IMG/VR virus record: IMGVR_UViG_3300032242_002454
Span: 124,001 to 188,000 of that record
Direction: 5' to 3' (one strand)
Length of the DNA: 64,000 nt
Positions 1-32,628 of this stretch are shown here, one piece after another. The position numbers and the translations under genes were made by a program. A model generated the notes under the pieces. The model was not told the origin of the DNA and made no database searches. It worked only from the letters and a program-made list of their open reading frames with translations. Every line of letters begins with the position of its first letter. Position 1 is the first letter of the stretch.

Positions 1-1255
1 ACAATGTTATTAGTTGGGATTGGCAAAAACTTAAACTTACCAAAGATGAGATTGTGGGGCTGGCTAATTTTCTTAATCAGTTTGTGGAGGAAAACTAATG
101 GTAATTCAAAAAACTTGGACAGACCTTTTGGGAAAGCCTCAAGGTAATGAAAGTGTTGATGGGAAAGATATTGTGAGGGAAGTTAGTCCTCATCAATTTA
201 GAATACTGTGGTCATGCTGCACTAATAAAGAAGCTAATTGGATTTATACCTATTGGACAACTATGGAGAATAGCTAATGAAATGGAACATAGAACTTGTC
301 AAAGCAAAACACAGGTTTGAGACAGACCATTCATTAAACCAGCTATCATATTATGATACTATGTCAGATTGTTTGGTTCCTATGCTTGACGAGCCTTTGT
401 CTCCTAAATTAATTTTGCAAATGGAAGAATTTTCACAATCGGACAAGGGAATTGTATTCATGGATTATAAAACTCACAAAATAGGCTTAATAATTAATAA
501 CTGAAAAGATATACGGAGAAAACTAATGACTAGATTAAATTTGGATTTGACAACTAAACAGATCAATATTCTATTTAAGGCTTTGGAAAGTCTTGAGAAG
601 AATAATACTGTAGGAGATACTGAACTTAGTAGAGATATTGTTAAGTTGACAAGATATTTGGATAGTGTGGTGTTTGTTGAGAAATGGTATGTGGAGAATA
701 AATAATGACCTATAGTATAGTCTATGAATACGGAGAAGATCCAAATACTTCAATAAAATATATTAGAAATGAATATGGACTATTTTGCTCCAATGGTCGT
801 TTTTTAAGCAAATGGAGTAACCAAAATGGTTGGCTAGACATTACCACATTTATTGATTATACTCCTATTGAGCAAGTTGAGAGTATTACTAGAAAAATGT
901 TTGGAGAATAAATAATGGCTGGACTAGTATTGTTCGGTATATTAGGATATATGGCTTGTATACGAATTTATGATTGGTGGAATGGATATGGGGATTTATT
1001 TTAATGACTAAATCTGAATATAAGGCTTACCACTTTAAAGTTATCCAGTACATTTATGCAGAATATAGGGATTTTCATTTTAATAAGATGAAAAATGGAT
1101 CATTATTGATTCAATTAAATCCAATCGATAAACACCTATTTCATTTACTAATTAAAAATCTATACAATCCTAAAGATAGTATTAATAATATTGCTGGTAA
1201 TGTAATGGAAGAGATGTATCAACATTTATGGGGAATTTCTAAGATAAGGTCTTGA
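1..1255 (+). other. Run of small hypothetical early-type ORFs (277..504, 705..911, 1004..1255 and sub-60-aa ORFs between them)
   Basis: Tightly packed + strand ORFs with GGAG-type RBS and TAATG stop/start overlaps; no recognisable motifs. Confidence 0.7.
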
Positions 1256-1280
1256 CAACATCCGATAAGAATGGTATGCT
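1252..1280 (+). promoter_or_regulatory. sigma70-type promoter (class I)
   Basis: TTGACA-17-TATGCT, spacer contains CCGATA. Confidence 0.8.
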
Positions 1281-1300
1281 TACTGGCAAAGAGATAACTA

Positions 1301-1489
1301 ATGACTCTGCTAAGAACTCTGAATCTTGAATATGATACTATCGAGATTCATTATAATGAGCTTTTGAAAAATAAACCTTACTTGGTGAGGGTTTTCTCAT
1401 ATAATAATACTGATCCCAGCGAACTACGTCTGGACGAAAAAGAAGTAAAAAATCTATATCAAACCCTTAAAGAACATGAGCTATTATGA
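1301..1489 (+). CDS. hypothetical protein
   Basis: ORF directly after promoter. Confidence 0.7.
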   Translation: MTLLRTLNLEYDTIEIHYNELLKNKPYLVRVFSYNNTDPSELRLDEKEVKNLYQTLKEHELL

Positions 1490-1824
1490 AACCCATAATT
1501 CTAACGGATGAACAAGTGGCATCAATGCTGACTAGGGCATTTTACGAGGGTTTTAACTTCACTTGTGAAGGATTTAACGGAGAATGTGCATTTGACCATT
1601 TAGCCCCAGATGGATTGACGCTTGAGGAAAAGTCAGCTATTACCGTCAGAGAGATACTGTCAGATCATGATGCTAAACTAATGACTAAACCCATAATTTT
1701 AACGGATAAGGAAATTGAAGCAATTAAATGGTGTGTGGAGCAGTGGACGGGTATTAAACGAGCCGAAACTCTCCGTAATCTATTAGAAAGAATAAAGGAT
1801 AATGAAAACTTTAGTAGTAATTGA
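1486..1824 (+). CDS. hypothetical protein with shared LTDKEIEAI...TLRNLLER module
   Basis: KPIILTD occurs twice; C-terminal module shared with 2504..2734 and 3136..3492. Confidence 0.75.
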   Translation: MKPIILTDEQVASMLTRAFYEGFNFTCEGFNGECAFDHLAPDGLTLEEKSAITVREILSDHDAKLMTKPIILTDKEIEAIKWCVEQWTGIKRAETLRNLLERIKDNENFSSN

Positions 1825-2504
1825 AGTTGAAAACGAAATCGGCAACCCTTCTGCTCAAGATATAGAATTTTTTGTTAAACAAATCATAGAAAAAGGACTT
1901 GTTGGGAATTTTGACATACACAAGTATTGCCCAATGAGTGGTATATCGCTAAGAGTTTTAATAGCACTTCAAGCTGATAAAGATAGACTAAAGGGTCTTG
2001 CCGATTTTATCTATAAGTATTTGGTGAATAAATAATGAATAACCTACCAGAAATAGACAAAATATCAGTAATGAATCTGAAACCAGACGATATACTAGTT
2101 TTTAGTACCTATGATAAAATAGCTAGTAGTGTTTATTCAAGAATAGACCAAAAAATAACCGATTGGAAAGCCCAAAACAATATAAAAAACAAACATTTGA
2201 TACTAACTTCTCTAAAACTAGAAGTATTGTCAAAAGAACAAGTTGAAGGAGAAAAGAAATGACTGAACCTCTTAATGTTGGTCAAGAATTTATCAAAAGA
2301 CTCCGAAAATATAATGAGGGTACGATTCCTATTATGGGAGATATAGTAGGAATTGATGAATGGCGTAATGTTGCTATGAAAATTGGAGAAAAACTATCTT
2401 CAACAGGCCCGGATGATTACTATAATTTTACTCCACAACAATGGTTTGAGTGGGCAGATTCTCAGATAAATTCAAGATGGATTCCAAAAAGAAACAAAGG
2501 ATAA
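1802..2504 (+). other. three hypothetical ORFs (1802..2035, 2035..2262, 2259..2504)
   Basis: Overlapping start/stop coupling on + strand. Confidence 0.7.
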
Positions 2505-2734
2505 TGATGAATAAAAAATACGCCGTAACAGAGGGTGACACTCTGGCAAACATCCGAACTACAGATTCTTATCGTGAAATGCCAAATGGTCCGCCGCCTT
2601 CTTTATCTAAAAATGCAGAGATTAAGAGTTTGAAACTTACGGATAAAGAAATTGAGGCGATTGAGTGGTACGCAAATTTTCACGACGGGATACATCGTGA
2701 CACACTCCGCAATCTATTAGAAAGAACAAAGTAG
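2504..2734 (+). CDS. hypothetical protein with shared C-terminal module
   Basis: Ends LKLTDKEIEAIEW...DTLRNLLERTK; probable start ATG 2504 overlapping the upstream stop. Confidence 0.7.
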   Translation: MMNKKYAVTEGDTLANIRTTDSYREMPNGPPPSLSKNAEIKSLKLTDKEIEAIEWYANFHDGIHRDTLRNLLERTK

Positions 2735-2772
2735 ACCCAATGCTTACGGAACAGTTTCATTCAAGTTTGGTC

Positions 2773-2801
2773 TTGACAAGTGCCGATAAGTATGGTATAC
2801 T
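2773..2801 (+). promoter_or_regulatory. sigma70-type promoter (class I)
   Basis: TTGACA-17-TATACT, spacer GCCGATA. Confidence 0.85.
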
Positions 2802-2868
2802 AGATCAAATCTTAGAGATTTGATTGTATCAAAAAAATCAACAACGATAAATTGAGAGGAAAAAAAAT

Positions 2869-3129
2869 ATGTTCTCGCATAATGAAGCTAAAAACCTTAT
2901 TGTTAAAACTGTTGAAAATCTTCAAGGTTGCAAAGCTACTGAACTTGCAGCTAATCCCAAAATTGCAATTGAGGTTAGCAATCTTAATGAGCTTATTGAT
3001 GAGCTAATCCAAGAAGGAGATATAGTCGCCATAGAGTATGTTATCCCAAACCTGCCAGATAGAATTAAGATTTATTTGTTTCCACGAGGAACAAATTTTA
3101 AAAACTCAAAATCAGATTCAAAAATTTGA
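2869..3129 (+). CDS. hypothetical small protein, possibly winged-helix-like
   Basis: Pattern 'KATELA...LNELIDELIQEGDIV' suggests a wHTH; not confirmed. Confidence 0.5.
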   Translation: MFSHNEAKNLIVKTVENLQGCKATELAANPKIAIEVSNLNELIDELIQEGDIVAIEYVIPNLPDRIKIYLFPRGTNFKNSKSDSKI

Positions 3130-3135
3130 AGATAA

Positions 3136-3492
3136 ATGATGCACAAACACAGTATCTCTGCAATTAATACATTTGTTATTGAACCAATTGAAAACATTAC
3201 TATTTCATCCAATGAGATAGCTGGTGAAGGATATATTTTTACCATTAAGAATGGTTCATTTAATGAAAGTGTAACTTTTGGCTTAGATATAGAAGAAATA
3301 AAAACTTTTATTCATTATCTCAATAGTCTTATGCAAAAAATAACACCATCTAATAGTCTAGAAATTCTAACTTTGACAATTGACGAAAGACGAGCTATAG
3401 AGTATGCTAAAAAATGGGCATTAACGCTTCGTGATGGTGGTGTTATAGCAAAAACTCTTCAATCTTTATTAGAAAGAACAAAGGATAAATAA
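3136..3492 (+). CDS. hypothetical protein with shared C-terminal module
   Basis: Ends LTLTIDERRAIEY...KTLQSLLERTKDK. Confidence 0.75.
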   Translation: MMHKHSISAINTFVIEPIENITISSNEIAGEGYIFTIKNGSFNESVTFGLDIEEIKTFIHYLNSLMQKITPSNSLEILTLTIDERRAIEYAKKWALTLRDGGVIAKTLQSLLERTKDK

Positions 3493-4477
3493 TGGAAATT
3501 CAAAATAAGAAAGAGATTACTCTAAGTGTTAAAGATGTTCAAGATATTATTTTTGATCATTTAACAAGACAATATAGGCTTGATGGGGATTTTAATTTTG
3601 ACTTTGTTGTTATCAATAAACCATACCCATGCGGAATTCACGATGCTTGTGATCGTTATGAATTTGATGGGGTAAAGATTGTGGTGACTCATGAGTAAAT
3701 TTCTAGACAATCAAAAAGCACAAGATATGACTGTGACTCTAATACTTTTTGGAGTAGTGATAGTTCTCACAGCTTTTTCAATGTTTATTCTTAATCCTAT
3801 TCATAAAAAGAATATAGAAAAGCTAAAAAACAAACCAATAGACAGACAGAAGATTATTATTGACAATATTGCTGGTACTGTAGAAAGTATTCATCCTTGG
3901 GGACGCACAGAAGTTGTTCCTATAAATGGGATAGAATTAGAATACTTTGAATATTGTGATCAGTGGGTTATGTACGGAGATGTAGTTCAACCAATTGGTC
4001 GTAAAGGTTATTTTATGCCGGTCATGAGAGGCAGACTAAATCTTGACGTTAAAGATTTTACCCAAACATGGATTGAATATGGTGGTTACGAAACTGGTTC
4101 CTTAGAAAAACCAGAAACCTATGAGGACTTTAGATTAGCCCACATAAAAGTAAAACTAGGGGAAATTACCAAAGTAGAATATACTCACTACAGACTATTA
4201 CCAAATAATATTTGGAGTATAATCTCTTCGTGGGAGTCAAAATCTAATGAAACCAATTGAAGTTGGATTTGATGGAAGTTTTGATATAACTTCTGGTCAT
4301 GTAGGGCCACTAAAGATAAGACTAACTAGAAGTGGTTCAAATCCTAAAGATTGGATAAACCCACCTATTGACAACACATTCATCTGGTTGTATACTGACA
4401 AGGACAACCCAGAGTTGTTATACAAGAATAAAGATGGTAAACTTTATAGCGTCAATTTTGAACCTTTTGGGGAATAA
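3492..4477 (+). other. three hypothetical ORFs (3492..3698; 3691..4260 with an N-terminal TM helix; 4247..4477)
   Basis: Coupled ORFs; hydrophobic stretch VTLILFGVVIVLTAFSMFIL. Confidence 0.7.
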
Positions 4478-4480
4478 TTC

Positions 4481-4861
4481 GTGATCGGTTTAAATATACG
4501 GTCGCCTTGGTCTACCCTTTTAATTAATGGTCAGAAAACGGTCGAAACCCGCTCCTATCGACTTCCCACAAGATTAGAGGGAGTTGAGTTGGCACTTATT
4601 GAAACTCCGGGGAAATCGGCTAAGTTTAAGAGTAGAATTATCGGAACAATTACTTTTAGTGATTGTATTCAGTATTCCTCTAAAGAACAGTGGGAATCTG
4701 ATGAGAGTAGACATAAGGTGAGTATTGAGGATAGGACTTATGGTTGGAAAGATAAGCCTAAGTTTGGATGGATCGTACAATCAGTCAAAAAATTTAAAAA
4801 TCCCATTGACCCTCCTGCTAAACGTGGTATAATTTACGCTAGAGATTGTAACATTTCTTAG
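4481..4861 (+). CDS. ASCH-domain protein
   Basis: GLNIRSPWSTLLINGQKTVETR matches the ASCH (PUA-like) GxKxxExR motif. Confidence 0.85.
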   Translation: MIGLNIRSPWSTLLINGQKTVETRSYRLPTRLEGVELALIETPGKSAKFKSRIIGTITFSDCIQYSSKEQWESDESRHKVSIEDRTYGWKDKPKFGWIVQSVKKFKNPIDPPAKRGIIYARDCNIS

Positions 4862-4871
4862 GAGAAATAAA

Positions 4872-5489
4872 ATGGATAACTATAATCAAGACTTTATGAT
4901 TTCAGCTAATAAATGTGCTAAATTCATATATAATGATCCTATTCAAAAAGAATCATATGAATCCCATATTCATCTTGGACACAATCCAAGAGATCATATT
5001 TATTTTGATGCTGCCTATGTATTAAACAAAGATGATGAACTGGATATTGACATTAACTATTATCAAGAAATCACTAATAGCTAGGAGTTTAAATGAGTTG
5101 GGTTTTTATTGTGGCTAGAGGATCAACAGTTGAAAGAGTTAAAGTCTTTAATGACTATTTTGCAGGCGAGGCTTATACTAGCGAATATCTTAGGATAGAA
5201 TTTGGGGTCAATGAAGTTGATTTCCCAGAATATCGTAAGGGGGAATATTATCAAAATGCTGATTCTGGAGTAAGTGTGGGTCTTTATAAGGATAACTCCT
5301 AAAATGGAAAAGTTAATTAATCTGTTCCCTCTTTTCCTCATTATTTTTGTTGTAACATTTTTATCTTATCAATCTGAATACAAGTCAGAAAAATGTGAAG
5401 TAAGAATTAGACAGGATAAGTCGGTATGTTTTTGTAATGGATTAAGCGTTCAATCAGAGAAACAATGTCCTACCATGAATGATTTGTAA
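4872..5489 (+). other. hypothetical ORFs (4872..5084, 5093..5302, small membrane protein ending at 5489)
   Basis: ORF track, RBS-preceded. Confidence 0.65.
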
Positions 5490-5497
5490 AGTGCCTG

Positions 5498-5525
5498 TTG
5501 ACAAACGCCGATAACGTAGTATACT
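5498..5525 (+). promoter_or_regulatory. sigma70-type promoter (class I)
   Basis: TTGACA-16-TATACT, spacer GCCGATA. Confidence 0.8.
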
Positions 5526-5549
5526 TAGGGCATCCTTTGGAGAAACTTT

Positions 5550-5714: not shown

Positions 5715-5728
5715 TTATTGGAGAAAAT

Positions 5729-6729: not shown

Positions 6730-7337
6730 ATAATAGTATTACTCTCATTGGTGATGTTCATGGTAAATATAAACATTATCATGAAATAATTAGAGAAAAA
6801 GATCGTCATCCATATACTATTCAGTTGGGTGATTTTGGTTTTAATTACGAAACATTAAAGAATGTAGACCCTACTAAACATAAAATTATTGGAGGTAATC
6901 ATGACAATTACAGTAGCATTAATGATAGCCCTAATTACCTTGGTAATTGTGGGTACTCATGTTTGAATGGTGTTAAATTTTTCTATTATAGAGGTGCTTA
7001 TAGCATTGATCGTGCAAATAGAACCATAGGTATAGACTGGTGGGAAGATGAACAGGTTACTATTGATCAATTTATGAAAGCTAGAGAGCTTTATAGAGAA
7101 GTAAAACCAGACATTGTTTTAACTCATGATTGTCCAGATGAAGTTAGCTTGAGAATACTAGATAGAAATCAAAGAAAATATGAGAACCTAACAGGATGGG
7201 CTTTGCAAGAGCTATTTAATATTCATCAACCTAAAATATGGCGATTTGGTCATTATCATAAGAGTTGGAACTTAAATATAAGTGGTACAGACTTTAAATG
7301 TTTAAACGAGTTGGAAACTGAGCTATTGACAGTTTAG
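6726..7337 (+). CDS. calcineurin-like metallophosphoesterase
   Basis: GDVHG, GDFG, GGNHD, THDCP, FGHYH motifs. Confidence 0.9.
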   Translation: MNNSITLIGDVHGKYKHYHEIIREKDRHPYTIQLGDFGFNYETLKNVDPTKHKIIGGNHDNYSSINDSPNYLGNCGYSCLNGVKFFYYRGAYSIDRANRTIGIDWWEDEQVTIDQFMKARELYREVKPDIVLTHDCPDEVSLRILDRNQRKYENLTGWALQELFNIHQPKIWRFGHYHKSWNLNISGTDFKCLNELETELLTV

Positions 7338-7354
7338 TTCTGACGAGGTATAAT
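7326..7354 (+). promoter_or_regulatory. sigma70-type promoter
   Basis: Perfect TTGACA-17-TATAAT. Confidence 0.85.
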
Positions 7355-7472
7355 AAACTTGTTGATGCCTCAATGGTAGGGATCGCGGGTATTCCCACAA
7401 TCAACTTCCGTAGATTTTTGGTATAGTTTTTTGTAAGACTAAAAACGATATTCTATTACTAGAAACTTTTAT

Positions 7473-13089: not shown

Positions 13090-13103
13090 TTCTCAAGTCT
13101 CAG

Positions 13104-13132
13104 TTGACAGTTGGACGATACTGTGATAGAAT
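13104..13132 (+). promoter_or_regulatory. sigma70-type promoter (class I)
   Basis: TTGACA-17-TAGAAT, spacer ACGATA. Confidence 0.8.
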
Positions 13133-14389: not shown

Positions 14390-14845
14390 ATGAAGATAAT
14401 TCAGAAAACAATTAAGAAAGCCTATCAACATTGGCAACCCGATCCTCTCATTCGTTGCTATCATTATGCTGCTGCTTTTGATGGAACCAAGATGATTGAA
14501 TTTGCACAGAATAACCCTATCAAGATGAGTACCAAAGCTTTTAGAATTGGTAAACGATTTAATATACCTAAGTATTTGGAGTATCCTTATGTTCATAGTG
14601 AATCTCATCTTATTTCTAAATTACTTGATCGCTATAATTCCATTGATCCTAATTGGAGCATATGTGTCCTTAGAATTAACAGACAAGGATTAATTCTTGG
14701 AAGTAAGCCGTGCGTTAACTGTTCTAAACTGTTAAATGCTGTTGGGTTAACTCAAGTATATCATAGTGATGATAATGGAGATTTCGTTTGTCCAACCAAA
14801 ACCATTAAGGTTGAAAGCTTGACAATGCCGATAGCTATGGTATAA
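14390..14845 (+). CDS. cytidine/deoxycytidylate deaminase-family protein
   Basis: HSE ... SKPCVNC zinc-binding motif. Confidence 0.8.
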   Translation: MKIIQKTIKKAYQHWQPDPLIRCYHYAAAFDGTKMIEFAQNNPIKMSTKAFRIGKRFNIPKYLEYPYVHSESHLISKLLDRYNSIDPNWSICVLRINRQGLILGSKPCVNCSKLLNAVGLTQVYHSDDNGDFVCPTKTIKVESLTMPIAMV

Positions 14846-14846
14846 A
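14819..14846 (+). promoter_or_regulatory. sigma70-type promoter (class I)
   Basis: TTGACA-16-TATAAA, spacer GCCGATA. Confidence 0.7.
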
Positions 14847-16019: not shown

Positions 16020-16049
16020 AATTTTCAGAGAACCGCTAAAGATTTCCAC

Positions 16050-16077
16050 TTGACAGTGCCGATTACTGTGATATACT
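16050..16077 (+). promoter_or_regulatory. sigma70-type promoter (class I)
   Basis: TTGACA-16-TATACT, spacer GCCGATT. Confidence 0.8.
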
Positions 16078-17553: not shown

Positions 17554-17709
17554 TCAAAACGAAATAAATGAACTAAAAAATCAAATACATGATTTAAAAG
17601 AATATCTATATTCTGATTTATGTAAGGCTTGTGGAGAGGCAGCATTATCTCTGGAGAAAATTAGCGAAAGATTAAATGAACTAGAGTCTCAACAAAATTC
17701 CTAAAGGTC

Positions 17710-17738
17710 TTGACAGTGGTTGGTCGATAGGATACAAT
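17710..17738 (+). promoter_or_regulatory. sigma70-type promoter (class I) driving the tRNA/tmRNA locus
   Basis: TTGACA-17-TACAAT, spacer TCGATA. Confidence 0.85.
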
Positions 17739-17751: not shown

Positions 17752-17824
17752 GGGGCGTTCGTCTAATGGTCTAAGACGCTAGTCTTATTAACTAGCTAAG
17801 GGAGTTCGATTCTCTCACGCCCTA
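17752..17824 (+). tRNA. tRNA-Ile (anticodon UAU), atypical U37
   Basis: Acceptor GGGGCGT/ACGCCCT+A; D stem GTCT/AGAC; anticodon stem CTAGT/ACTAG with loop CT-TAT-TA; T arm GGGAG-TTCGATT-CTCTC. Confidence 0.8.
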
Positions 17825-17864
17825 CTTTTGCTTTAAGTATTCGATTCTTGATTGAAAGCAAGTA

Positions 17865-21364: not shown

Positions 21365-21790
21365 ATGCACAAGATTGTTATACGGTCAATTTTTTATCAC
21401 TGGCTATTTTTATTTGTCGGTGTTGCTATAGGATTTATCTGCAACTCAGAATATGTTGGAGAAAAAGCTGTTGTTATAGAAAGATCAATTAATAATATCT
21501 TTTTCCCTATAGAATATAATGAGCAGATAGAAAATTATGTTAAATGGATGGGTAAAAATAGGATACATTCTGAATTAGGATATCCGCATGATTTTCAAAT
21601 TCTTGAAGATGTTGTAAAGGGCGAGGAATATTATTGGGCTATAGCGAAATATACAGATGTAAAAACTGGACAAGAAATTAAAACTATAGTTAGTACAAAA
21701 ATAAGATGGCGACCTTGGGAATATAATTATCATACCAAGAAATTTGATAGCATCGTGGAAGAAAAAAGGCTAAGTCAGGATAAAAACTAA
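21365..21790 (+). CDS. membrane-anchored hypothetical protein
   Basis: N-terminal TM helix. Confidence 0.65.
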   Translation: MHKIVIRSIFYHWLFLFVGVAIGFICNSEYVGEKAVVIERSINNIFFPIEYNEQIENYVKWMGKNRIHSELGYPHDFQILEDVVKGEEYYWAIAKYTDVKTGQEIKTIVSTKIRWRPWEYNYHTKKFDSIVEEKRLSQDKN

Positions 21791-21801
21791 AGAGCAGTGG
21801 C

Positions 21802-21830
21802 TTGACAAGACGATAGGACTAGTGTACAAT
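21802..21830 (+). promoter_or_regulatory. sigma70-type promoter (class I)
   Basis: TTGACA-17-TACAAT, spacer ACGATA. Confidence 0.85.
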
Positions 21831-23747: not shown

Positions 23748-23751
23748 TTCA

Positions 23752-24318
23752 ATGGACAGGATAGAAGGTGGTCAGAAAATTTTCTTTATCTCTGATCTTC
23801 ACCTTGGACATAAAAATATCATAGGATATTGTAATCGTCCATTCTCCACTGGAGAAGAAATGGATTCTCAAATTCTTTCTTCCATAAACGAAAAAGTCTC
23901 CCAAAACGATATTCTTTATGTTCTAGGAGATTTTTGCCATAAAGGTGGAGTTGCTCAATCTTATAGAGAAAGAATAGCTTGTGAAAATATTCATATGATT
24001 CTAGGTAATCATGATGAACCAACTAAATTTTCCACAGGATTTTCTAGTGTTGGCTATCAGAAAATGATTCTATATAAAAATCAAAAAATATTTATGTGTC
24101 ACTATCCCATGCGAAGCTGGCCTAGTAGTCACAAAAAAAGCTGGATGCTTTATGGTCATGTTCATAGCAGATTCCATCGTGAGGACGTTGTTTCTGGTAG
24201 CCTCACGCTTGATGTAGGCGTGGATAATAAAAGAGATGGGGTGACATTCGGTACTCCTTGGAGTTTTAAAGACGTTCAACAACAATTTCTGGCGAGAGCG
24301 AAAAATTTTTCAAGGTAG
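23752..24318 (+). CDS. calcineurin-like phosphoesterase
   Basis: SDLHLGH, LGDF, GNHD, MCHYP, GHVH, DVGVD. Confidence 0.9.
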   Translation: MDRIEGGQKIFFISDLHLGHKNIIGYCNRPFSTGEEMDSQILSSINEKVSQNDILYVLGDFCHKGGVAQSYRERIACENIHMILGNHDEPTKFSTGFSSVGYQKMILYKNQKIFMCHYPMRSWPSSHKKSWMLYGHVHSRFHREDVVSGSLTLDVGVDNKRDGVTFGTPWSFKDVQQQFLARAKNFSR

Positions 24319-24322
24319 CCTG

Positions 24323-24351
24323 TTGACAATGCCGATACCATACTGTACAAT
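24323..24351 (+). promoter_or_regulatory. sigma70-type promoter (class I)
   Basis: TTGACA-17-TACAAT, spacer GCCGATA. Confidence 0.85.
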
Positions 24352-24822: not shown

Positions 24823-24895
24823 GGCCCAGTAACCCAATGGCAGAGGTAGCGGACTTAAAATCCGTCAAGTATCAGTTCGAGTCTGATCTGGGCCA
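24823..24895 (+). tRNA. tRNA-Leu (anticodon UAA), short variable arm
   Basis: Acceptor GGCCCAG/CTGGGCC+A; anticodon stem GCGGA/TCCGT with loop CT-TAA-AA; T arm ATCAG-TTCGAGT-CTGAT. Confidence 0.92.
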
Positions 24896-24972
24896 CTTTA
24901 ATGTGGTGTAAAAAGTAGACAAAATATATCTATCTTGGTGTATGTAATTGTGGCACATACAAGGAGATAGTT

Positions 24973-26711: not shown

Positions 26712-26712
26712 T

Positions 26713-27234
26713 ATGATTAATAGTAAATACAAAATTGATTTATCTGATTTTTATAGTGATGACGGTGGGTATTGTACACTATTTAAATTGCTTAATGAGC
26801 CATCACTAGGATTCAAAGAATTCATTTCCAAATCTAGAGCAAAATATGCTAGGAGAATTCAGATAAGACTAAGTAAACTTAATCTTGCACCAAAAGTATA
26901 TTCTAGAGTATGCAAGATGACTTATAATGGATTTTTTCCGGGCAAAAAAAGTGGTTGGGGATATGTCACAGAATTAGCTAAAACTGGAAATAAAAAAGTT
27001 AGATTATGCAATATACAGAGATTGGTTGATGTTATTTACGATAGAACAAAATTAAAATTTTGGGACTGTCATTGGGCTAATCTTGGATATATTATAAGAA
27101 AAGGCAAAAGAAAATTGGTTTGTATTGATACTGGTAAAGAAACTTGGGATGGTTATGCTAATTATTTTGGAAATATTGATCCTGGCCCAAAGTGTTCGTA
27201 TTGTTTAAAATATAAATGTAGGTGTGTAGAATAA
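26713..27234 (+). CDS. protein kinase-like / APH-fold phosphotransferase
   Basis: GFKEF (Lys), DCHWAN (DxHxxN catalytic loop), CIDTG (DFG-like). Confidence 0.65.
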   Translation: MINSKYKIDLSDFYSDDGGYCTLFKLLNEPSLGFKEFISKSRAKYARRIQIRLSKLNLAPKVYSRVCKMTYNGFFPGKKSGWGYVTELAKTGNKKVRLCNIQRLVDVIYDRTKLKFWDCHWANLGYIIRKGKRKLVCIDTGKETWDGYANYFGNIDPGPKCSYCLKYKCRCVE

Positions 27235-28121
27235 TGAAATATCTTATAGCTGGTGGTGCTGGTTTTATAGGTAGTCATATTGCAGATACTCTTTTAGATA
27301 TGGGTCATGATGTTATAATTATTGATAATCTATCTACAGGAAAAAAAAGTAACATACCTAATAGAGCTACTTTTGTAGAATTAGATATAGCTAAATCTCC
27401 TATAGAAATTTTATCATCTTTTTTTGATGGAGTAACCGCAGTATTCCATTGTGCCGCATTACCCAATGTTCAGTTTTCTATAGAACAACCTTTGGATTCT
27501 AATAAAGCTAATGTAGATACTACTATTAAAATTTTAGAGTCTATGAGAATCAAAAAAATTAAGAAGATTATATACAGCAGTTCTTGTTCTATATATGGAG
27601 ATGCTATACAGATACCTACTACTGAAAATGAAACTATTAAACCATTAAGCCCATACGCTTTACAGAAATATATTGGAGAAGAATACTGTTCCCTTTATTA
27701 TAGGCTTTACAATATAGAATATGTTGCTTTGCGTTATTTTAATGTATATGGTGAACGAATGACTGATACTGGAGCTTATGTTAGTGTATTGAGTCACTTT
27801 TTAAGAGCTTACAAAAATAATCAGCCGTTAAATATTACTAATACTGGAGAACAAAAAAGAGATTTTGTATATGTAAAAGACATAGCCAAAGCAAATGTTT
27901 TGGCTGCATTAAAAAATATTGGTGGTGAAACTATATTAAACTTAGGATCAGGTAATAACTATTCTATAAATTCTATTGCTAGTTGGTTTAATCATAATAT
28001 TGTTTATGGAGAATCTAGAATAGAACCATTTGAAACTTTAGCTGACATAAATAAAGCTAAAAATATATTGAATTGGTTACCAAAAGTAAATTTAAAATCA
28101 TGGGTAATGCAAAATATTTAA
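27234..28121 (+). CDS. NAD-dependent epimerase/dehydratase (UDP-glucose 4-epimerase-like)
   Basis: GGAGFIG, SSSCSIYG, YALQK (YxxxK), LRYFNVYG. Confidence 0.93.
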   Translation: MKYLIAGGAGFIGSHIADTLLDMGHDVIIIDNLSTGKKSNIPNRATFVELDIAKSPIEILSSFFDGVTAVFHCAALPNVQFSIEQPLDSNKANVDTTIKILESMRIKKIKKIIYSSSCSIYGDAIQIPTTENETIKPLSPYALQKYIGEEYCSLYYRLYNIEYVALRYFNVYGERMTDTGAYVSVLSHFLRAYKNNQPLNITNTGEQKRDFVYVKDIAKANVLAALKNIGGETILNLGSGNNYSINSIASWFNHNIVYGESRIEPFETLADINKAKNILNWLPKVNLKSWVMQNI

Positions 28122-28131
28122 GGAAATTATA

Positions 28132-28482
28132 ATGCCATATATTAAAGAAGAAAATAGACTTACTCTTGATGAATGTATTGATCATATGGTGGTTTGTTTG
28201 AAAAATAGTGCTTTCAGAGCATCATTTGATCCAAATAAAAATAATTATATGAAGGAAGAACTAAGTAATGAAGATGTTTTAGCTATAGTTGGAGATATTA
28301 ATTACTGTATTTCTCGTGTTGTTTCTAAGCTAATGGGCAAGGTATCGTATTCTAAAATAGCAATGATTACAGGAGTATTAGAAAATATAAAGCAAGAGTT
28401 TTATCGTAGAATTGGTGTATCTTTAGAAGATAAGAAAATTATAGAAAATGGAGATATACCAGAATACAAAAGGTTATGCTAA
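28132..28482 (+). CDS. conserved phage hypothetical protein
   Basis: MPYIKEE...GDINY...EFYRR...NGDI pattern typical of a widespread phage family. Confidence 0.75.
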   Translation: MPYIKEENRLTLDECIDHMVVCLKNSAFRASFDPNKNNYMKEELSNEDVLAIVGDINYCISRVVSKLMGKVSYSKIAMITGVLENIKQEFYRRIGVSLEDKKIIENGDIPEYKRLC

Positions 28483-29195
28483 AAAACACAAAAAAGAATG
28501 ATTATTCATTAATCTCAAAAAAAGAACTAGAAAAATTATTAAATGAAGGATTGAATTTTACAGAAATAGGTTCTCTTTATGGTAGAAATCTGCACTATAT
28601 TAGAACGATATGTAAAAAATACAATCTTAAAATTAAATCAAAGGCGACTGTCTGTTTAAACTGTCAAAAAAAGTTTAAGCATAAAGCAACCATCCCAGCC
28701 AAATACTGTTCCACAAAATGTCGATCTGCACATTGGCCAAAAATAAATAAAGAAAAGCATAAAGAATTAGTTAAAAAATCTAGATTTAAGTGTCATCCAG
28801 TAAAATGCAGAAAATGTAACAATAATATATCAGATAATAATAGAAAATCTGGTTTGGTTTACTGTAGTGATTTATGTAGAAAACAGAATAAGACGATATC
28901 TGATAAACAAAGTCGAGATAAAAAATATAAACAATTTGGTCTTTACAAAATATCTATAGGATGTCAAAATTGCGGATATAATAAATGTTCTGGTTCTTTA
29001 GATTTTCATCATGTCAATCCACAAACAAAATCGACTAGAATAAGCTGTGGACTCTGGAAAGCTAATACTGAAGTATTTCAAAAAGAACTGTTAAAATGTA
29101 TATTACTATGTAAAAATTGTCATTATGAAGCACATAATCAGATTCTTATTATAGAAGGAAATGAAGGACAATGGAATTGTATATACCAAAATTAA
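28476..29195 (+). mobile_element. free-standing HNH endonuclease
   Basis: HTH-like N-terminus, CxxC...YCSxxC repeats, CQNCG...LDFHHVNP...KCILLCKNCH. Confidence 0.85.
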
Positions 29196-29205
29196 AGGTG
29201 TATAA

Positions 29206-29250
29206 ATTATTAAGAATGGCGATATTAAAGAGTATAAACGCCTAAAATAA
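29206..29250 (+). pseudogene. orphan duplicate of the last 14 codons of gene 28132..28482
   Basis: Reads IIKNGDIKEYKRLK* versus IIENGDIPEYKRLC*. Confidence 0.75.
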
Positions 29251-29260
29251 AGAGGCCAAA

Positions 29261-29572
29261 ATGTCTAAAAATATTGATGATGTAATTAAAGAGGTAATGA
29301 AAAGCAATAAGGAGATTCATACTATGGACGCTCATATCTCTAAAGACATTACCGATCTAAAAAAGAGCATCAAAAATATTGAGAATAAGATCAAAATGAT
29401 AGATAATAAAATGGATCAAACCATAGATCTATTAAATACTTTCATTACTCTTATTACTGAACAGGATGATATAGATCTTGATGATGAAGAAGAGAATGAG
29501 GATTGGACTCCTTATGATCAACAAGAAGATTATCAAGCTGATGATGAAGATGAGGAAGAAGAACAATACTAA
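29261..29572 (+). CDS. coiled-coil protein with acidic tail
   Basis: Heptad pattern then D/E-rich C-terminus. Confidence 0.7.
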   Translation: MSKNIDDVIKEVMKSNKEIHTMDAHISKDITDLKKSIKNIENKIKMIDNKMDQTIDLLNTFITLITEQDDIDLDDEEENEDWTPYDQQEDYQADDEDEEEEQY

Positions 29573-29823
29573 TGGCTAGTTTAGCTCTACTAGTAACAAT
29601 AATTTTTTTATCTGTGCTAATAATAGGTCCAATTAGTTATATTCTATCATTATTTTCTTGGATGCCAAATTTAATCAAATGGATAATGGCAATAGTTTGT
29701 ATTTTTGTTGGGGGTTGGGTTTGTTTTCTACCTATACCCTTTTTAAGAGCTTTGGGATTAATTGATATAGCAATAGGATTAAAGATCATATCGGATAGCA
29801 CACAAAAGAAAAGTGATGCTTGA
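29572..29823 (+). CDS. small multi-TM membrane protein
   Basis: Three hydrophobic segments. Confidence 0.7.
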   Translation: MASLALLVTIIFLSVLIIGPISYILSLFSWMPNLIKWIMAIVCIFVGGWVCFLPIPFLRALGLIDIAIGLKIISDSTQKKSDA

Positions 29824-29848
29824 CAAGACCGTATGCCGATGGTATACT
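29820..29848 (+). promoter_or_regulatory. sigma70-type promoter (class I) for rIIA
   Basis: TTGACA-17-TATACT, spacer GCCGATG. Confidence 0.85.
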
Positions 29849-29888
29849 TGAGCCATCACAGGAACGATAACACTTTTGGAGAATAAAG

Positions 29889-32579
29889 ATGAAGTTGGCA
29901 GATAGGACGATTGAGACTCACAGCGTTGGTGTTGCAAGTAGGAACCAATTCAATATCGCTCAGACGAGCAAGATGTTTAAAATCCTTTCAGACTCTCTTT
30001 ATTCTGATAAGGTAATGGCAGCAATTCGTGAGCTTTCTACTAATGCTTATGATAGTCATATCTCTGCTGGGAATAGGAATCCTTTTAAGGTTACTCTGCC
30101 CACCGCTGCTAATCCTACCTTTATGGTGAGAGATTATGGTACTGGTCTTAGTCAGGCCGATATGGAGGACTTGTATACAACTTATGGTGCCTCAAACAAA
30201 AATGATAGCAATGATTTTGTTGGTTGTCTTGGTCTAGGGTCTAAGAGTCCGTTTGCCTACACCAAGAGCTTCACCACTGCATCATATTACAATGGTAAGA
30301 AATATACCTATATTGCAGCAATTGATGAGAGTGGTGTTCCTACTCTGAATCTTTTTAATACTGCCGAAACATCTGAGCCTAATGGTCTTGAGATTAGTTT
30401 TGCTGTTAAGCAGCATGACTTTCAAGAGTTCACCGATAAGGCTAAGAGAATTTTCCACTACTTCCGAATGAAACCCATCATTGAGGGTGGTGTTGGTGGT
30501 AATCTTATGGATCATAAGTATAGCAATACCAATATCGTTATTAGTGGTGAGGGTTGGAGAGTTTGCCGACTCAATAATGATAACAGTTATTTTCCCAGCA
30601 ATTATCATCGAATTGATAGTGGTATCATCGCTATCATGGGAAATATTGCGTATCCTGTTCAAACCGCACAGATTGTTGGTCAAGAAAAGGAAGAAATGCC
30701 CGACCATATTCAGAAGTGGAATAGGGCTTTCCAGAAAGCAGATATTGATTCTTGGAAGAGTTTTGTGGGAGAGATTCTTAACTCTGGTCTTTATCTTGAA
30801 CTGGATTTTGGTATCGGTGAACTTGAGATGGACGTTAGCCGCGAAGGTTTGCAGTATACCAAGGATGTAATTAAGGCTCTTCGTAAAAAGACCCAAGAAA
30901 TTTACATGGAGATGAAGGAAGAATTCTCCAAGAAAATTCAAGCATCCAAGACCAAGGTAGAAGCAATTACTTCATATTATACTATGAATGAATTGGCTGG
31001 CGGCTGGGGTGTTGGTGCCACTTGGACTGATCCCAAGGGTAAAGATCATCCGATCAATTCTGGAAATGATTTGGAATATAAAATTCCGGCTGGCAAGAGT
31101 CTGTATGTTTTTAACTATAAGACTGCTGGCTATCGTTCTCGTCGTCAAGTTGCTTTGACAGATAAGATTCATCACGAAACTCTTACTGGTAAAGGTTCTT
31201 ACTATTGGAATAACCAGAGGAAGAAAGGCACGATGGCTTTCTTTATCTGTGACGTTAAGGGTGAAGAAACAGCAAAGAAGATCATCACAAAGTATTGCAA
31301 TAGTAATGATTGTTTTGCCTACTTGATGCTTGATACTAAGGACTATACCAAGAGTGGAGAAGGTTTTGATAAGCTGATCGAAGATGTTGGATCTGAAAAT
31401 CTGCTCAAGGTTTCAGACTACAAACATCTTACTCAAAGTTCTGGCCCAAGAAAGTCTTACAATAGAAATTCTAATGGTAGTGTTAGTGATCAAGACGTAT
31501 TCTTTATTCATGGCTATGATGATGATAGTAAGCAGATTACTAATCCTTATAACGATGCTACTTGTCTAAGAATTCTTTCAGAAGAACAACTGGAAGATTT
31601 TCTAGAGCAGGATGAGATAGTGTACGTTCCTATGCTTCGATATAAGACTGAGGCTGAATCCGGTCATCCTGAGATTAGTGATATTACCACTACTCTTGGT
31701 GATGATAGCTTGAAGTTTATAGTCAAGGATTTGCTGGGAGATAGTAAGATTTATGCTATCAAAAACGCTTTTGTTAAAAAGCTTCAAAATGATGGGTATA
31801 ATCTTGTCAGTTTTAATGAATTCTTTAAGCGTCAGTTGAAGATTGTTGCTCAGAAACATTTTTCAAGTTTGGCTTCTTTCAATGATCTTGTTGAGTTCTG
31901 TAAGAAAGAATATGCAAGCGAAGAACATAAGAACAACCAATATAGATATTATAATCATGGAACTATGGATAAACAGTTCATGTTTCATATGTTGAATATC
32001 TTTGGGTTGAATTATGAAAAGTTTATTGGTAGTAAGACTCTGGTTGAGTGCATAGACACTACTATGCTTATGGAATTCTTTGCTAATACTGTTCATGATA
32101 ATAACTTTAGGATTGAAAGATTTTCTCAATCAGATTATTTCTCTCATATCTCAAGGTTAATGGACAAGGTTAATATCCGATCAGTAGACAGTAAAGATAT
32201 TCGTAAGGCTAGTTTGGCTTACAATGTCTTGACTAGTCTGATTAGTGGATCACTTTATACTGGATCTAATTCTCATAAAGCTGAAACTTATCTGAAAATT
32301 ATTAAGGGTGAGTCTAAGGAAAACTTTAAACTACCAGCAATCTCTAAGATTAGAGAGAGTGTCAGAACTGAACTTGATAAGAACCCTATGCTAAAGTATA
32401 TTCTTGGTAGTCATCAAGTTACTGGAACTCTTACTGATCTAAGAGCTAAGAAGAATCCTATTAATCAGCTTGATGAACGTCATTCCTATTATAATAATGA
32501 TGGTAAGGATTGGATCATGCAGATGAGCCAAGAGAATATTGACCTATTTAGAATTCAGTTGAGTAGTTTAGTCAAGTAG
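29889..32579 (+). CDS. rIIA: RIIA-like protein (GHKL/HSP90-type ATPase N-terminus)
   Basis: LSDSLYSDK...IRELSTNAYD, VRDYGTG, GCLGLGSKSPF; adjacent rIIB. Confidence 0.88.
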   Translation: MKLADRTIETHSVGVASRNQFNIAQTSKMFKILSDSLYSDKVMAAIRELSTNAYDSHISAGNRNPFKVTLPTAANPTFMVRDYGTGLSQADMEDLYTTYGASNKNDSNDFVGCLGLGSKSPFAYTKSFTTASYYNGKKYTYIAAIDESGVPTLNLFNTAETSEPNGLEISFAVKQHDFQEFTDKAKRIFHYFRMKPIIEGGVGGNLMDHKYSNTNIVISGEGWRVCRLNNDNSYFPSNYHRIDSGIIAIMGNIAYPVQTAQIVGQEKEEMPDHIQKWNRAFQKADIDSWKSFVGEILNSGLYLELDFGIGELEMDVSREGLQYTKDVIKALRKKTQEIYMEMKEEFSKKIQASKTKVEAITSYYTMNELAGGWGVGATWTDPKGKDHPINSGNDLEYKIPAGKSLYVFNYKTAGYRSRRQVALTDKIHHETLTGKGSYYWNNQRKKGTMAFFICDVKGEETAKKIITKYCNSNDCFAYLMLDTKDYTKSGEGFDKLIEDVGSENLLKVSDYKHLTQSSGPRKSYNRNSNGSVSDQDVFFIHGYDDDSKQITNPYNDATCLRILSEEQLEDFLEQDEIVYVPMLRYKTEAESGHPEISDITTTLGDDSLKFIVKDLLGDSKIYAIKNAFVKKLQNDGYNLVSFNEFFKRQLKIVAQKHFSSLASFNDLVEFCKKEYASEEHKNNQYRYYNHGTMDKQFMFHMLNIFGLNYEKFIGSKTLVECIDTTMLMEFFANTVHDNNFRIERFSQSDYFSHISRLMDKVNIRSVDSKDIRKASLAYNVLTSLISGSLYTGSNSHKAETYLKIIKGESKENFKLPAISKIRESVRTELDKNPMLKYILGSHQVTGTLTDLRAKKNPINQLDERHSYYNNDGKDWIMQMSQENIDLFRIQLSSLVK

Positions 32580-32600
32580 TCAGAAATTTCTCAAGACCCC

Positions 32601-32628
32601 TTGACAAGCTTGCCGATTAGTGTAAAAT
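32601..32628 (+). promoter_or_regulatory. sigma70-type promoter (class I) for rIIB
   Basis: TTGACA-16-TAAAAT, spacer GCCGATT. Confidence 0.8.

What the first reader, a model, noticed from the sequence alone, without database searches (positions are those of the whole stretch)
1252..32628. Family of sigma70 promoters carrying a conserved (C)CGAT spacer motif and an upstream TCAAG element
Twelve TTGACA-16/17-TAnnnT/A promoters start at 1252, 2773, 5498, 7326, 13104, 14819, 16050, 17710, 21802, 24323, 29820 and 32601. Eleven have CGAT (mostly GCCGATA) inside the spacer, which is normally unconstrained. Several also have AATTT(C/T)TCAAG a few bases upstream of -35 (13088, 24304, 32585). Those at 21802, 29820 and 32601 share ATCACAG just after -10. 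Inference: a phage or host factor, or a modified RNAP, reads the spacer, giving a coordinated early-gene switch. Candidate regulators are the TraR-like 14882, the HTH-like 24431 and 2869.
Basis: partly seen in the sequence, partly recalled or inferred. Interest (0 to 1): 0.65.

Follow-up and report, generated by a model that had tools for sequence, protein, structure and literature searches.

The report
Two overlapping promoters on phage early genes
The "spacer CGAT" and the "upstream TCAAG" are the two boxes of a second promoter that resembles the flagellar sigma-28 type and lies on top of most early sigma-70 promoters of an uncultured 205-kb lake phage, so two different RNA polymerase holoenzymes can probably start the same early genes.

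Summary
All 12 TTGACA-N16/17-TAnnnT sites exist and 11 carry CGAT in the spacer. Genome-wide, 23 of 39 early promoters do, against 2.7% expected (p about 2e-26).

CGAT is not a spacer signal. It is the core of G-C/A-CGATAA, and the upstream element is TCTAAAG/TCTCAAG. The two boxes keep an 18-nt gap (17-19), while their position relative to TTGACA shifts by up to 22 nt (offsets co-vary, r = 0.999). Both boxes match the sigma-28/FliA consensus (TCTAAAG / GCCGATAA). The gap, however, is 2 nt longer than the bacterial norm of 16, which held in 35 of 60 hits from 401 Pseudomonadota genomes.

The same overlap occurs in relatives whose phage sigma factor is only 47-50% identical. It is restricted to the early-gene strand.

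Best reading: each early unit has two superimposed promoters. Host sigma-70 reads one. An alternative sigma reads the other. I favour the phage's own sigma (window 48334-48915), whose gene has its own embedded pair of promoters. Host FliA is the main rival. Which sigma reads the boxes is inferred, not shown.

The parts
1237..1280 (+). Dual promoter: sigma-28-like -35 TTCTAAG 1237-1243; sigma-70 -35 TTGACA 1252-1257; sigma-28-like -10 TCCGATAA 1261-1268; sigma-70 -10 TATGCT 1275-1280; box gap 19 (weaker variant)
2759..2801 (+). Dual promoter: ATTCAAG 2759-2765; TTGACA 2773-2778; GCCGATAA 2782-2789; TATACT 2796-2801; gap 18
5485..5525 (+). Dual promoter: TGTAAAG 5485-5491; TTGACA 5498-5503; GCCGATAA 5507-5514; TATACT 5520-5525; gap 17
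7326..7354 (+). Sigma-70-type promoter only (TTGACA-N17-TATAAT), with no CGAT and no upstream box
13091..13132 (+). Dual promoter: TCTCAAG 13091-13097; TTGACA 13104-13109; GACGATAC 13114-13121; TAGAAT 13127-13132; gap 18. Both boxes are kept at the orthologous promoter in relatives G004 and G006 while the rest varies
14803..14846 (+). Dual promoter: CATTAAG 14803-14809; TTGACA 14819-14824; GCCGATAG 14827-14834; TATAAA 14841-14846; gap 19
16035..16077 (+). Dual promoter: GCTAAAG 16035-16041; TTGACA 16050-16055; GCCGATTA 16058-16065; TATACT 16072-16077; gap 18
17700..17738 (+). Dual promoter: CCTAAAG 17700-17706; TTGACA 17710-17715; GTCGATAG 17723-17730; TACAAT 17733-17738; gap 18 although CGAT lies 9 nt after TTGACA. 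It drives tRNA-Ile(TAT) at 17752-17825
21786..21830 (+). Dual promoter: ACTAAAG 21786-21792; TTGACA 21802-21807; GACGATAG 21809-21816; TACAAT 21825-21830; gap 18 although CGAT lies 3 nt after TTGACA
24308..24351 (+). Dual promoter: TTTCAAG 24308-24314; TTGACA 24323-24328; GCCGATAC 24331-24338; TACAAT 24346-24351; gap 18
29820..29848 (+). rIIA promoter, sigma-70 type. Its CGAT (GCCGATGG 29835-29842) abuts the -10 and has no upstream box, so it is not part of the bipartite family, though CGATG is kept in relatives
32589..32628 (+). rIIB dual promoter: TCTCAAG 32589-32595; TTGACA 32601-32606; GCCGATTA 32612-32619; TAAAAT 32623-32628; gap 18. The 28-nt stretch from TCAAG to GCCGATT is identical in five relatives
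47863..47960 (+). Promoter pair embedded in the ORF upstream of the phage sigma gene: TTGACA 47863-47868, TAAAAT 47886-47891, then TCTCATG 47931-47937 and GACGATAT 47953-47960 (gap 17). Kept at synonymous sites across the clade
48334..48915 (+). Phage sigma-70-family sigma factor, 193 aa, with sigma-2 and sigma-4 domains and a low-confidence, presumably disordered, acidic linker. Candidate reader of the second promoter class

Best explanation
The conserved CGAT is the core of a -10 box G-[C/A]-CGATAA. The upstream TCAAG/TAAAG element is the matching -35 box TCT[A/C]AAG. Together they form a second, independent promoter laid over the host-type TTGACA/TAnAAT promoter in several registers. In the usual register its -10 falls inside the sigma-70 spacer. 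In another, its -35 sits 2 nt after TTGACA and its -10 directly after the sigma-70 -10. In a third it lies wholly upstream. Most early transcription units can therefore be started by two holoenzymes. Host sigma-70 RNA polymerase acts at once after infection. A polymerase carrying an alternative sigma would start about 11-12 nt further upstream in the usual register. I take that alternative sigma to be most probably the phage's own sigma (window 48334-48915), made early from its own embedded sigma-70 promoter and then feeding back on its own gene and on the whole early region. That would be a hand-over from the host sigma to the phage sigma which keeps early genes running, comparable in role to T4 middle promoters or the SPO1 gp28 stage. 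Shown: the boxes, their fixed gap, their independence of the sigma-70 register, their strand and region specificity, and their conservation in the clade. Inferred: that the unit is a promoter, and which sigma reads it.
For: (1) Aligned on CGAT, 25 sites give G (21/25), C/A, CGATAA, and upstream TTt-C-T-[C/A]-A-A-G-t. These are the published sigma-28 boxes TCTAAAG and GCCGATAA, including the extended -10 G (PMC12784957; PMC2859248). (2) A scan for T[ACT]AAG-Nx-CGAT[AT] that ignores TTGACA gives 21 hits at x=18, 5 at 17 and 4 at 19. Every other x from 10 to 26 gives 0-2. The - strand gives 0-3 throughout. 27 of the 30 hits lie at 100-158 kb. (3) Relative to TTGACA each box moves (sd 7 nt, range -14 to +8 for the -35 box), but the two offsets co-vary with r = 0.999 (permutation p <= 1e-5) and the gap sd is 0.34. 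(4) Three overlap registers exist, which a single composite sigma-70 element would not allow. (5) A PWM scan at score >= 16 gives 27 hits on the + strand, 0 on the - strand and 2 in a shuffle. (6) The same architecture with gap 17-18 is present in relatives G001-G004 and G006-G008, whose sigma is 47-83% identical. At orthologous promoters the boxes persist while the flanks change. (7) For the phage sigma: the phage encodes a true sigma with sigma-2 and sigma-4 domains (TIGR02937 61 bits, above its cut-off of 42.9; Sigma70_r4 46 bits). The other phage-specific promoter class, GGTGTAYnWA, has no -35 box, so a sigma with a sigma-4 domain is best matched to the bipartite class. The only strong box pair outside the early region lies 380 nt upstream of the sigma gene, next to an embedded TTGACA-N17-TAAAAT. 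Both are kept in 18 relatives through rare codons: TTG (13% of Leu) is invariant, and the codon before GAT is always C-ending across four different amino acids, where 10% of codons end in C. (8) Against a host FliA: the gap is 18 or 17, whereas in 401 Pseudomonadota genomes the same boxes peak at 16 (35 of 60 hits; 3 at 18). In a sample of viral contigs, gap-16 sites almost never contain TTGAC (1 of 30), while gap-18 sites do (24 of 32).
Against: There are no transcription start data; the only RNA data available were short assembled contigs that show no 5' ends. The recognition helix of the phage sigma (VTREAVRQNIQK, invariant in the clade) keeps the four residues with which sigma-70 contacts TTGACA (this residue assignment is from my own knowledge of sigma-A/-35 structures). 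It looks like RpoS/SigA region 4 rather than FliA, so on sequence alone it would be expected to bind TTGACA, not TCTAAAG. The protein has no sigma-3 domain, which in FliA reads the extended -10 G that is conserved here. A match to both FliA boxes would have to be convergent. The embedded promoter pair upstream of the sigma gene is equally expected if every early gene simply carries both promoter types. One related set of contigs (G424) shows the dual promoters but no sigma orthologue was found there, although that bin is incomplete.
Confidence: 0.45

Rival explanations
1. The architecture is the same (a second, overlapping promoter) but the reader is the host's flagellar sigma factor (sigma-28/FliA/SigD). 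The phage doubles its early promoters so that both the housekeeping and the motility holoenzyme of a swimming host express its early genes.
For: Both boxes match the FliA consensus at about 13-15 positions, including the TC prefix of the -35 box and the extended -10 G. The phage has no FliA orthologue of its own. The phage sigma's DNA-reading helix is not FliA-like. Canonical FliA-type box pairs do occur in other viral contigs.
Against: The gap is 18 (17-19) in this phage and 17-18 across the clade, against 16 in 35 of 60 bacterial hits and 18 in only 3 of 60. A site selected for FliA would be expected to sit at FliA's optimum. The host is unknown. The low-GC, 1.1-Mb bin labelled Rickettsiales that holds a close relative's terminase, and eight of its relatives, have no FliA, though binning is weak evidence. 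The clade occurs in both lake and marine (Tara) data.
Confidence: 0.25
2. The two boxes are a bipartite operator for a phage (or host) DNA-binding protein that is not a sigma factor. It would be a repressor or activator clamping the -35 region of early promoters to shut them off or boost them together.
For: The fixed gap of about two helical turns, centre to centre, would put both boxes on one face of the DNA. The boxes flank or overlap core promoter elements, as operators do.
Against: The boxes are not palindromic or repeated. Their orientation always follows the direction of transcription. The resemblance of both halves to one known promoter class would be coincidence. In register B the unit lies downstream of -35 and in register C wholly upstream, so it has no constant steric relation to the polymerase. 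No candidate binder gained family support and there is no MotA or AsiA.
Confidence: 0.12
3. One reading: the spacer sequence is read by sigma-70 RNA polymerase itself or by a modified polymerase (spacer contacts of the Z-element or extended -10 kind).
For: CGAT most often starts 12 nt upstream of the -10 hexamer (9 of 23 promoters).
Against: The position relative to -10 ranges from -14 to -6 and in three promoters is +7 to +9. The motif tracks the upstream box instead (r = 0.999). Sixteen of 39 perfect early promoters lack it.
Confidence: 0.04
4. There is no function of its own: the boxes are inherited passengers of a duplicated promoter cassette that spread through the early region by recombination.
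For: Some neighbouring promoters at 101-105 kb share long stretches, including a common leader ACAAGAAAGA.
Against: Between the boxes and around them the sequences differ freely. The registers differ. The boxes persist at orthologous sites in genomes whose proteins are only 50-60% identical, and inside a coding region against codon preference.
Confidence: 0.04

Closest known systems
Sigma-28 (FliA / SigD / WhiG) class promoters of flagellar late genes: E. coli TAAAGTTT-n11-GCCGATAA; P. aeruginosa fliC -36 TCTAAAG -30 / -15 GCCGATAA -8
   Same: Both boxes are the same, including the TC prefix of the -35 box and the extended -10 G. The orientation follows transcription and the units lie upstream of genes.
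   Different: The gap between the G of TCTAAAG and CGAT is 18 (17-19) instead of 16. The units are superimposed on perfect sigma-70 promoters. They serve phage early genes. No flagellar context or FliA is known for the host.
Phage T4 early region with early (sigma-70) plus middle (MotA/AsiA) promoters
   Same: Early genes are served by two promoter classes, so expression continues after the host-only phase. The second class is confined to the early region.
   Different: In T4 a MotA box replaces the -35 and sigma-70 is remodelled by AsiA. Here the -35 TTGACA is intact, the second unit has its own -35 and -10 boxes, no MotA or AsiA homologue is found, and the two promoters physically overlap.
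Bacillus phage SPO1 cascade (host sigma-A, then gp28, then gp33/34)
   Same: A large virulent phage uses host sigma for early genes and encodes its own sigma-like proteins for later classes. This phage has two sigma-like genes and two phage-specific promoter classes.
   Different: The SPO1 middle and late consensus sequences are unrelated to these boxes.
Autoregulated two-domain (ECF-type) sigma factors with AAC-N16-17-CGT promoters
   Same: The protein has two domains, sigma-2 and sigma-4. The -10 has a CG core and the -35 is A-rich. A cognate-looking promoter lies upstream of the sigma gene.
   Different: The phage sigma-4 matches Pfam Sigma70_r4 (groups 1-3) rather than r4_2. The boxes are the FliA ones, not GGAAC/CGTC. 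No anti-sigma partner was identified.
Sigma-70 spacer-reading elements (extended -10 TGn, Z-element / beta-prime zipper contacts)
   Same: A conserved sequence lies between -35 and -10.
   Different: Those elements have a fixed position relative to -10. This motif does not, and it can lie outside the spacer.

Membership tests
Sigma-70 (housekeeping) promoters | -35 TTGACA, -10 TAnnnT, spacer 17 +/- 1 | tested here: met
   39 perfect sites at 100-158 kb on the + strand. Genome-wide 33 on + against 2 on - for N17, with 3-4 for the reversed control. The -10 logo is T-A-n-A-[A/C]-T with G at -13 in 28 of 39.
Sigma-70 (housekeeping) promoters | Transcripts start 6-8 nt downstream of the -10 | not testable with these tools
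   Only assembled RNA contigs were available and they show no 5' ends.
Sigma-28 / FliA-class promoters | -35 box TCTAAAG / TAAAGTTT | tested here: met
   The alignment on CGAT gives C15-T20-[C10/A9]-A18-A20-G16 out of 25, followed by T-rich positions. The consensus is from PMC12784957 and PMC2859248.
Sigma-28 / FliA-class promoters | -10 box GCCGATAA including the extended -10 GC | tested here: met
   G 21/25, C 14/25 or A 7/25, then C-G-A-T 25/25 (fixed by the alignment), A 22/25, A 18/25.
Sigma-28 / FliA-class promoters | Spacing n11 between TAAAGTTT and GCCGATAA (16 nt from the G of TAAAG to CGAT) | tested here: not met
   The phage has 21 sites at 18, 5 at 17, 4 at 19 and 1 at 16; relatives have 17-18. 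Bacteria (401 Pseudomonadota genomes): 35 at 16, 7 at 15, 4 at 17, 3 at 18.
Sigma-28 / FliA-class promoters | Transcription depends on FliA, so the host has FliA | tested here: inconclusive
   The host is unknown (lake metagenomes). There is no FliA in the phage. Bins holding relatives mostly lack FliA, but binning is unreliable.
Phage-sigma-dependent (middle-type) promoters | The phage encodes a sigma factor | tested here: met
   Window 48334-48915: TIGR02937 at 61.4 bits (cut-off 42.9) and Sigma70_r4 at 46 bits (cut-off 24.1). The model matches sigma factors only. The family has more than 850 members.
Phage-sigma-dependent (middle-type) promoters | That sigma recognises these boxes | not testable with these tools
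   Only indirect evidence exists: a box pair upstream of its own gene kept against codon bias. The recognition helix looks like sigma-70 rather than FliA.
T4-type middle promoters (sigma appropriation) | MotA box at -30 replacing the -35, with MotA and AsiA proteins | tested here: not met
   The -35 TTGACA is intact. There are no AsiA (PF09010) or MotA C-terminal domain (PF09158) matches in the genome.
Spacer elements read by sigma-70 holoenzyme (extended -10, Z-element) | Fixed position relative to the -10 hexamer | tested here: not met
   CGAT starts at -14 to -6 and at +7 to +9 relative to the -10 hexamer.

The most novel reading that the evidence does not exclude
A widespread clade of uncultured aquatic jumbo phages has evolved its own two-domain sigma factor that reads FliA-like boxes at a 2-nt longer spacing. 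That spacing would make it orthogonal to any host FliA. The phages write its promoters directly over perfect host sigma-70 promoters in shifting registers. This would be a compact two-sigma relay on nearly every early gene, including the sigma gene itself.
Probability: 0.35. Interest if true: 0.75.

Novelty: new variant of a known kind. Interest (0 to 1): 0.6.

Why it matters
Phage temporal programmes are usually described as separate promoter classes on separate genes. Here two complete promoters share the same 45 bp on most early genes of a whole clade of abundant lake and marine phages. The second has the sequence of the flagellar sigma-28 class but a spacing that bacteria do not use.

That would be of interest for how sigma specificity and spacer length evolve, and as an orthogonal expression part.

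Either way, the boxes give a simple sequence signature for finding the early regions and hand-over points in hundreds of uncultured jumbo-phage genomes.

Tried and rejected
(1) Megablast of 9 kb against GenBank phages found nothing. Protein-level hits for rIIA, terminase and polymerase were 24-37% identical and spread over unrelated phages, so no annotated relative could be used.

(2) Transcription starts: three lake metatranscriptome runs hold parts of the early region, but only as short assembled contigs. No 5' ends could be read, and DNA carry-over cannot be excluded.

(3) Host identification through bacterial assemblies: relatives' terminase genes sit in bins labelled Rickettsiales, Alphaproteobacteria, Flavobacteriales, SAR202, Silvanigrellaceae and 'bacterium', which is too scattered to name a host. 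The only bin with a true FliA (G015) has box-pair hits that are not upstream of flagellar genes, and its sequence does not look low-GC, so it gave no spacing information.

(4) A fold search with the sigma model returned sigma factors of all groups at weak E-values (SigA, RpoS, SigB, SigH, SigD, WhiG, ECF SigL). It confirms a sigma but does not assign a group.

(5) Walking out to more distant sigma homologues, to look for co-variation between the recognition helix and the -35 box, failed. The 120 best hits of two searches are all at least 47% identical and the helix is invariant.

(6) Presence or absence of the sigma in a more distant set of contigs with dual promoters (G424) was inconclusive because the bin is incomplete.

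(7) Reading the T-rich/AAAG upstream element as an ordinary UP element was rejected. Its distance to TTGACA varies, and it can lie downstream of TTGACA.

(8) A Fur-box (GATAAT) or second sigma-70 -10 reading of CGATAAT was considered and dropped for lack of a repeat or of a consistent -35 at 17 nt.

(9) Three literature searches found no report of sigma-28-type promoters on phage early genes. The library is limited to open-access papers.

Full report
**What the window is.** The window is bases 124,001-188,000 of a 204,625-bp viral record with direct terminal repeats. It has 33% G+C. Samples holding the sequence are lake water.

It has no close relative among GenBank phages. It encodes rIIA/rIIB, a split DnaE-type polymerase, a terminase distantly like those of Bacillus siphoviruses, and giant structural proteins. 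Small genes on the + strand between about 100.5 and 157 kb form the early region.

**Check of the observation.** All twelve promoter-like sites are there, and eleven have CGAT between the hexamers.
- Over the whole genome, TTGACA-N17-TAnnnT occurs 33 times on the + strand and twice on the - strand. The reversed control gives 3-4.
- 39 perfect sites (N16-18) lie in the early region.
- 23 of those 39 have CGAT in the spacer, where 2.7% is expected (p = 2e-26).
- The upstream TCAAG element and the ATCACAG after three -10 boxes are also present.

One exception is the rIIA promoter at 29820, whose CGAT is of another kind.

**What the motif really is.** CGAT has no fixed place in the sigma-70 promoter. 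It starts 14 to 6 nt before the -10 hexamer, and in three promoters 7-9 nt after its start, beyond the hexamer.

Aligning 25 sites on CGAT shows two things:
- The conserved word is longer: G (21/25), C or A, then CGATAA.
- A second block appears at a constant distance upstream: T-rich, then C-T-[C/A]-A-A-G.

I then scanned the genome for T[ACT]AAG-Nx-CGAT[AT] without any reference to TTGACA:

| Gap x | + strand hits |
|---|---|
| 18 | 21 |
| 17 | 5 |
| 19 | 4 |
| any other value from 10 to 26 | 0-2 |

The - strand gives 0-3 at every x. 27 of the 30 hits at x = 17-19 fall in the early region.

Starting instead from the sigma-70 promoters, each box shifts relative to TTGACA (sd 7 nt; the upstream box ranges from -14 to +8). 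The two offsets co-vary with r = 0.999 (permutation p <= 1e-5), and the gap has sd 0.34.

Three registers occur:
- The common one has the CGATAA box inside the sigma-70 spacer.
- In a second (genome 101671, 103084, 105579, 107071), TAAAG/TCAAG follows the -35 hexamer (TTGACA or TTGCAA/TTGCAG) by 2 nt and GTCGATAT follows the sigma-70 -10 directly.
- In a third (genome 123390), the unit lies wholly upstream.

A position-weight scan gives 27 hits on the + strand, none on the - strand and 2 in a shuffle at score >= 16.

The 'spacer motif' and the 'upstream element' are therefore two halves of one unit, and that unit is independent of the sigma-70 promoter it overlaps.

**What it resembles.** The two boxes are the published consensus of sigma-28/FliA promoters:
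- TAAAGTTT-n11-GCCGATAA in E. coli (PMC2859248).
- -36 TCTAAAG -30 and -15 GCCGATAA -8 at P. aeruginosa fliC, where GC is the extended -10 (PMC12784957).

The match includes the TC prefix and the extended -10 G. The spacing does not match. The canonical distance from the G of TAAAG to CGAT is 16; here it is 18.

I measured the bacterial norm directly. In 401 Pseudomonadota genomes, TCTAAAG-N-GCCGATA gave 60 hits:

| Gap | 15 | 16 | 17 | 18 | 19 | 20 | 21 |
|---|---|---|---|---|---|---|---|
| Hits | 7 | 35 | 4 | 3 | 5 | 4 | 2 |

In a truncated sample of viral contigs the same boxes show two populations:

| Gap | Hits | With TTGAC inside |
|---|---|---|
| 16 | 30 | 1 |
| 17 | 20 | 8 |
| 18 | 32 | 24 |

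The long-gap form with an embedded TTGACA is the mark of this phage clade.

**Conservation.** The phage sigma gene served as a handle to 24 related viral contigs.
- Relatives with 47-83% identical sigma carry the same box pairs on the early-gene strand with gap 17-18 and the same registers.
- At the orthologous promoter of the endonuclease gene (window 13104), the boxes persist in two relatives while the surrounding bases change.
- Two records with few sites (G005, G009) are cut short before their early regions.

**Who reads it.** The phage has no FliA orthologue and no MotA or AsiA.

It does encode a true sigma-70-family protein of 193 aa at window 48334-48915. The model shows sigma-2 and sigma-4 domains joined by a low-confidence, presumably disordered, acidic linker. 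It also has a weaker sigma-2-like protein of 218 aa at genome 98950-99606 on the - strand.

Outside the early region, genes on both strands are preceded by a different motif, GGTGTAYnWA, 25-77 nt upstream of start codons and with no -35 box. A sigma with a sigma-4 domain fits a bipartite promoter better than that class.

The only strong box pair outside the early region lies 380 nt upstream of the sigma gene, inside the preceding ORF and 92 nt after an embedded TTGACA-N17-TAAAAT. Both are kept in 18 relatives. They are kept against codon preference:
- The Leu codon is always TTG, which accounts for 13% of Leu codons.
- The codon before GAT always ends in C, whether it encodes Asp, Ala, Ser or Thr. 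Only 10% of codons end in C.

In two distant relatives, an ordinary dual promoter sits directly upstream of the sigma gene instead. So the sigma gene is an early gene with its own pair of promoters. That is what an autoregulated sigma would show. It is also what any early gene of this phage shows.

- Its recognition helix (VTREAVRQNIQK, invariant in the clade) resembles RpoS/SigA region 4, not FliA. It keeps the residues that, from my knowledge of sigma-A/-35 structures, contact TTGACA.
- It lacks the sigma-3 domain that reads the extended -10 in FliA.

- The 2-nt longer gap is uniform.
- The host is unknown. Bins that hold relatives' terminase genes are scattered over phyla, and a 1.1-Mb low-GC bin labelled Rickettsiales, together with its relatives, lacks FliA. 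The sigma family also occurs in marine Tara data.

**Verdict on mechanism.** I put about 0.7 on the unit being a second promoter read by an alternative sigma holoenzyme:
- 0.45 for the phage sigma as reader.
- 0.25 for a host FliA-type sigma.
- 0.12 for a non-sigma binding protein using the boxes as a bipartite operator.
- A few per cent each for direct spacer reading by sigma-70 polymerase and for a functionless cassette passenger.

**Limits.** No transcription start, binding or timing data exist for this phage. RNA contigs were uninformative. The position-weight model was built from the sites it scores, so only its strand and shuffle controls carry weight. The literature searches cover open-access papers only.

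No alternative genetic code was used.

Noticed in passing
window 21329, 29197, 35743, 39155, 55304, 58171 (+ strand); genome 52935, 61642, 76102, 82515, 88936 (- strand): There is a third promoter-like class, GGTGTA[T/C]n[A/T]A, with no -35 box. It lies 25-77 nt upstream of start codons on both strands outside the early region, with a few copies inside it. It is probably the phage's middle/late promoter. It shares the GTA core with the early -10 region, where G at -13 is found in 28 of 39 sites.
   Followed up: partly
genome 98950-99606, - strand (L017:1111-1767): A second sigma-like protein of 218 aa. It has weak Sigma70_r2 and TIGR02937 matches and a cysteine-rich middle part, and it sits at the head of the leftward structural gene block. 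It may be a late sigma for the GGTGTAT class.
   Followed up: partly
window 47863-47891: A perfect TTGACA-N17-TAAAAT lies inside the coding sequence of ORF 47362-48288. It is invariant at synonymous sites in 18 relatives, which suggests an internal early promoter for the sigma gene.
   Followed up: yes
window 17752-17825 and 24823-24896: tRNA-Ile with the unusual anticodon TAT starts 14 nt after the -10 of the 17710 promoter. tRNA-Leu(TAA) lies downstream of the 24323 promoter's first gene.
   Followed up: no
genome 3437-5311 and 6201-7832 (L009): The DnaE-like (Pol III alpha type) DNA polymerase is split into two ORFs that match successive halves of one PHROG profile, with about 900 bp between them. 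This may be an inserted element or a genuine two-part enzyme.
   Followed up: no
window 21829, 29855, 32635: ATCACAG, mostly within (C/T)ATCACAGG, lies 0-7 nt after the -10 of three promoters, out of 9 copies in the genome. A related GTATCAC follows the promoter at genome 112499. This may be a shared initial transcribed sequence.
   Followed up: partly
genome 101282, 101981, 104383, 105312 (L014): Several leftmost early promoters share a leader ACAAGAAAGA(GA) about 10-15 nt after the -10, along with longer similar flanks, as if recently duplicated cassettes.
   Followed up: no
genome 113055-113552, - strand (L014:13055-13552): An HNH endonuclease gene lies on the opposite strand in the middle of the early region. 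It is probably a homing endonuclease.
   Followed up: no
window 29835-29842 and orthologous sites in G004, G006, G008: The rIIA promoter keeps (G/A)CGATG directly against its -10 in all four genomes but has no upstream box. This is a conserved feature not explained by the bipartite unit.
   Followed up: partly
loci L079-L198 (IMG/VR scan): Other viral contigs carry canonical gap-16 TCTAAAG...GCCGATAA pairs without an embedded TTGACA, some with the full TCTAAAGTTT form. There is also a separate set of 17 hits at gap 22. These may be true FliA promoters on other phages or proviruses.
   Followed up: no
genome 37321-52389 and 63019-75090, - strand: Two giant ORFs of 5,022 and 4,023 aa lie in the structural block.
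   Followed up: no
genome 123390-123447 (just left of the window): A divergent promoter region in which GCCGATA(C/T) occurs on both strands, and the TAAAG of the + strand unit is the complement of part of the - strand promoter's spacer.
   Followed up: no
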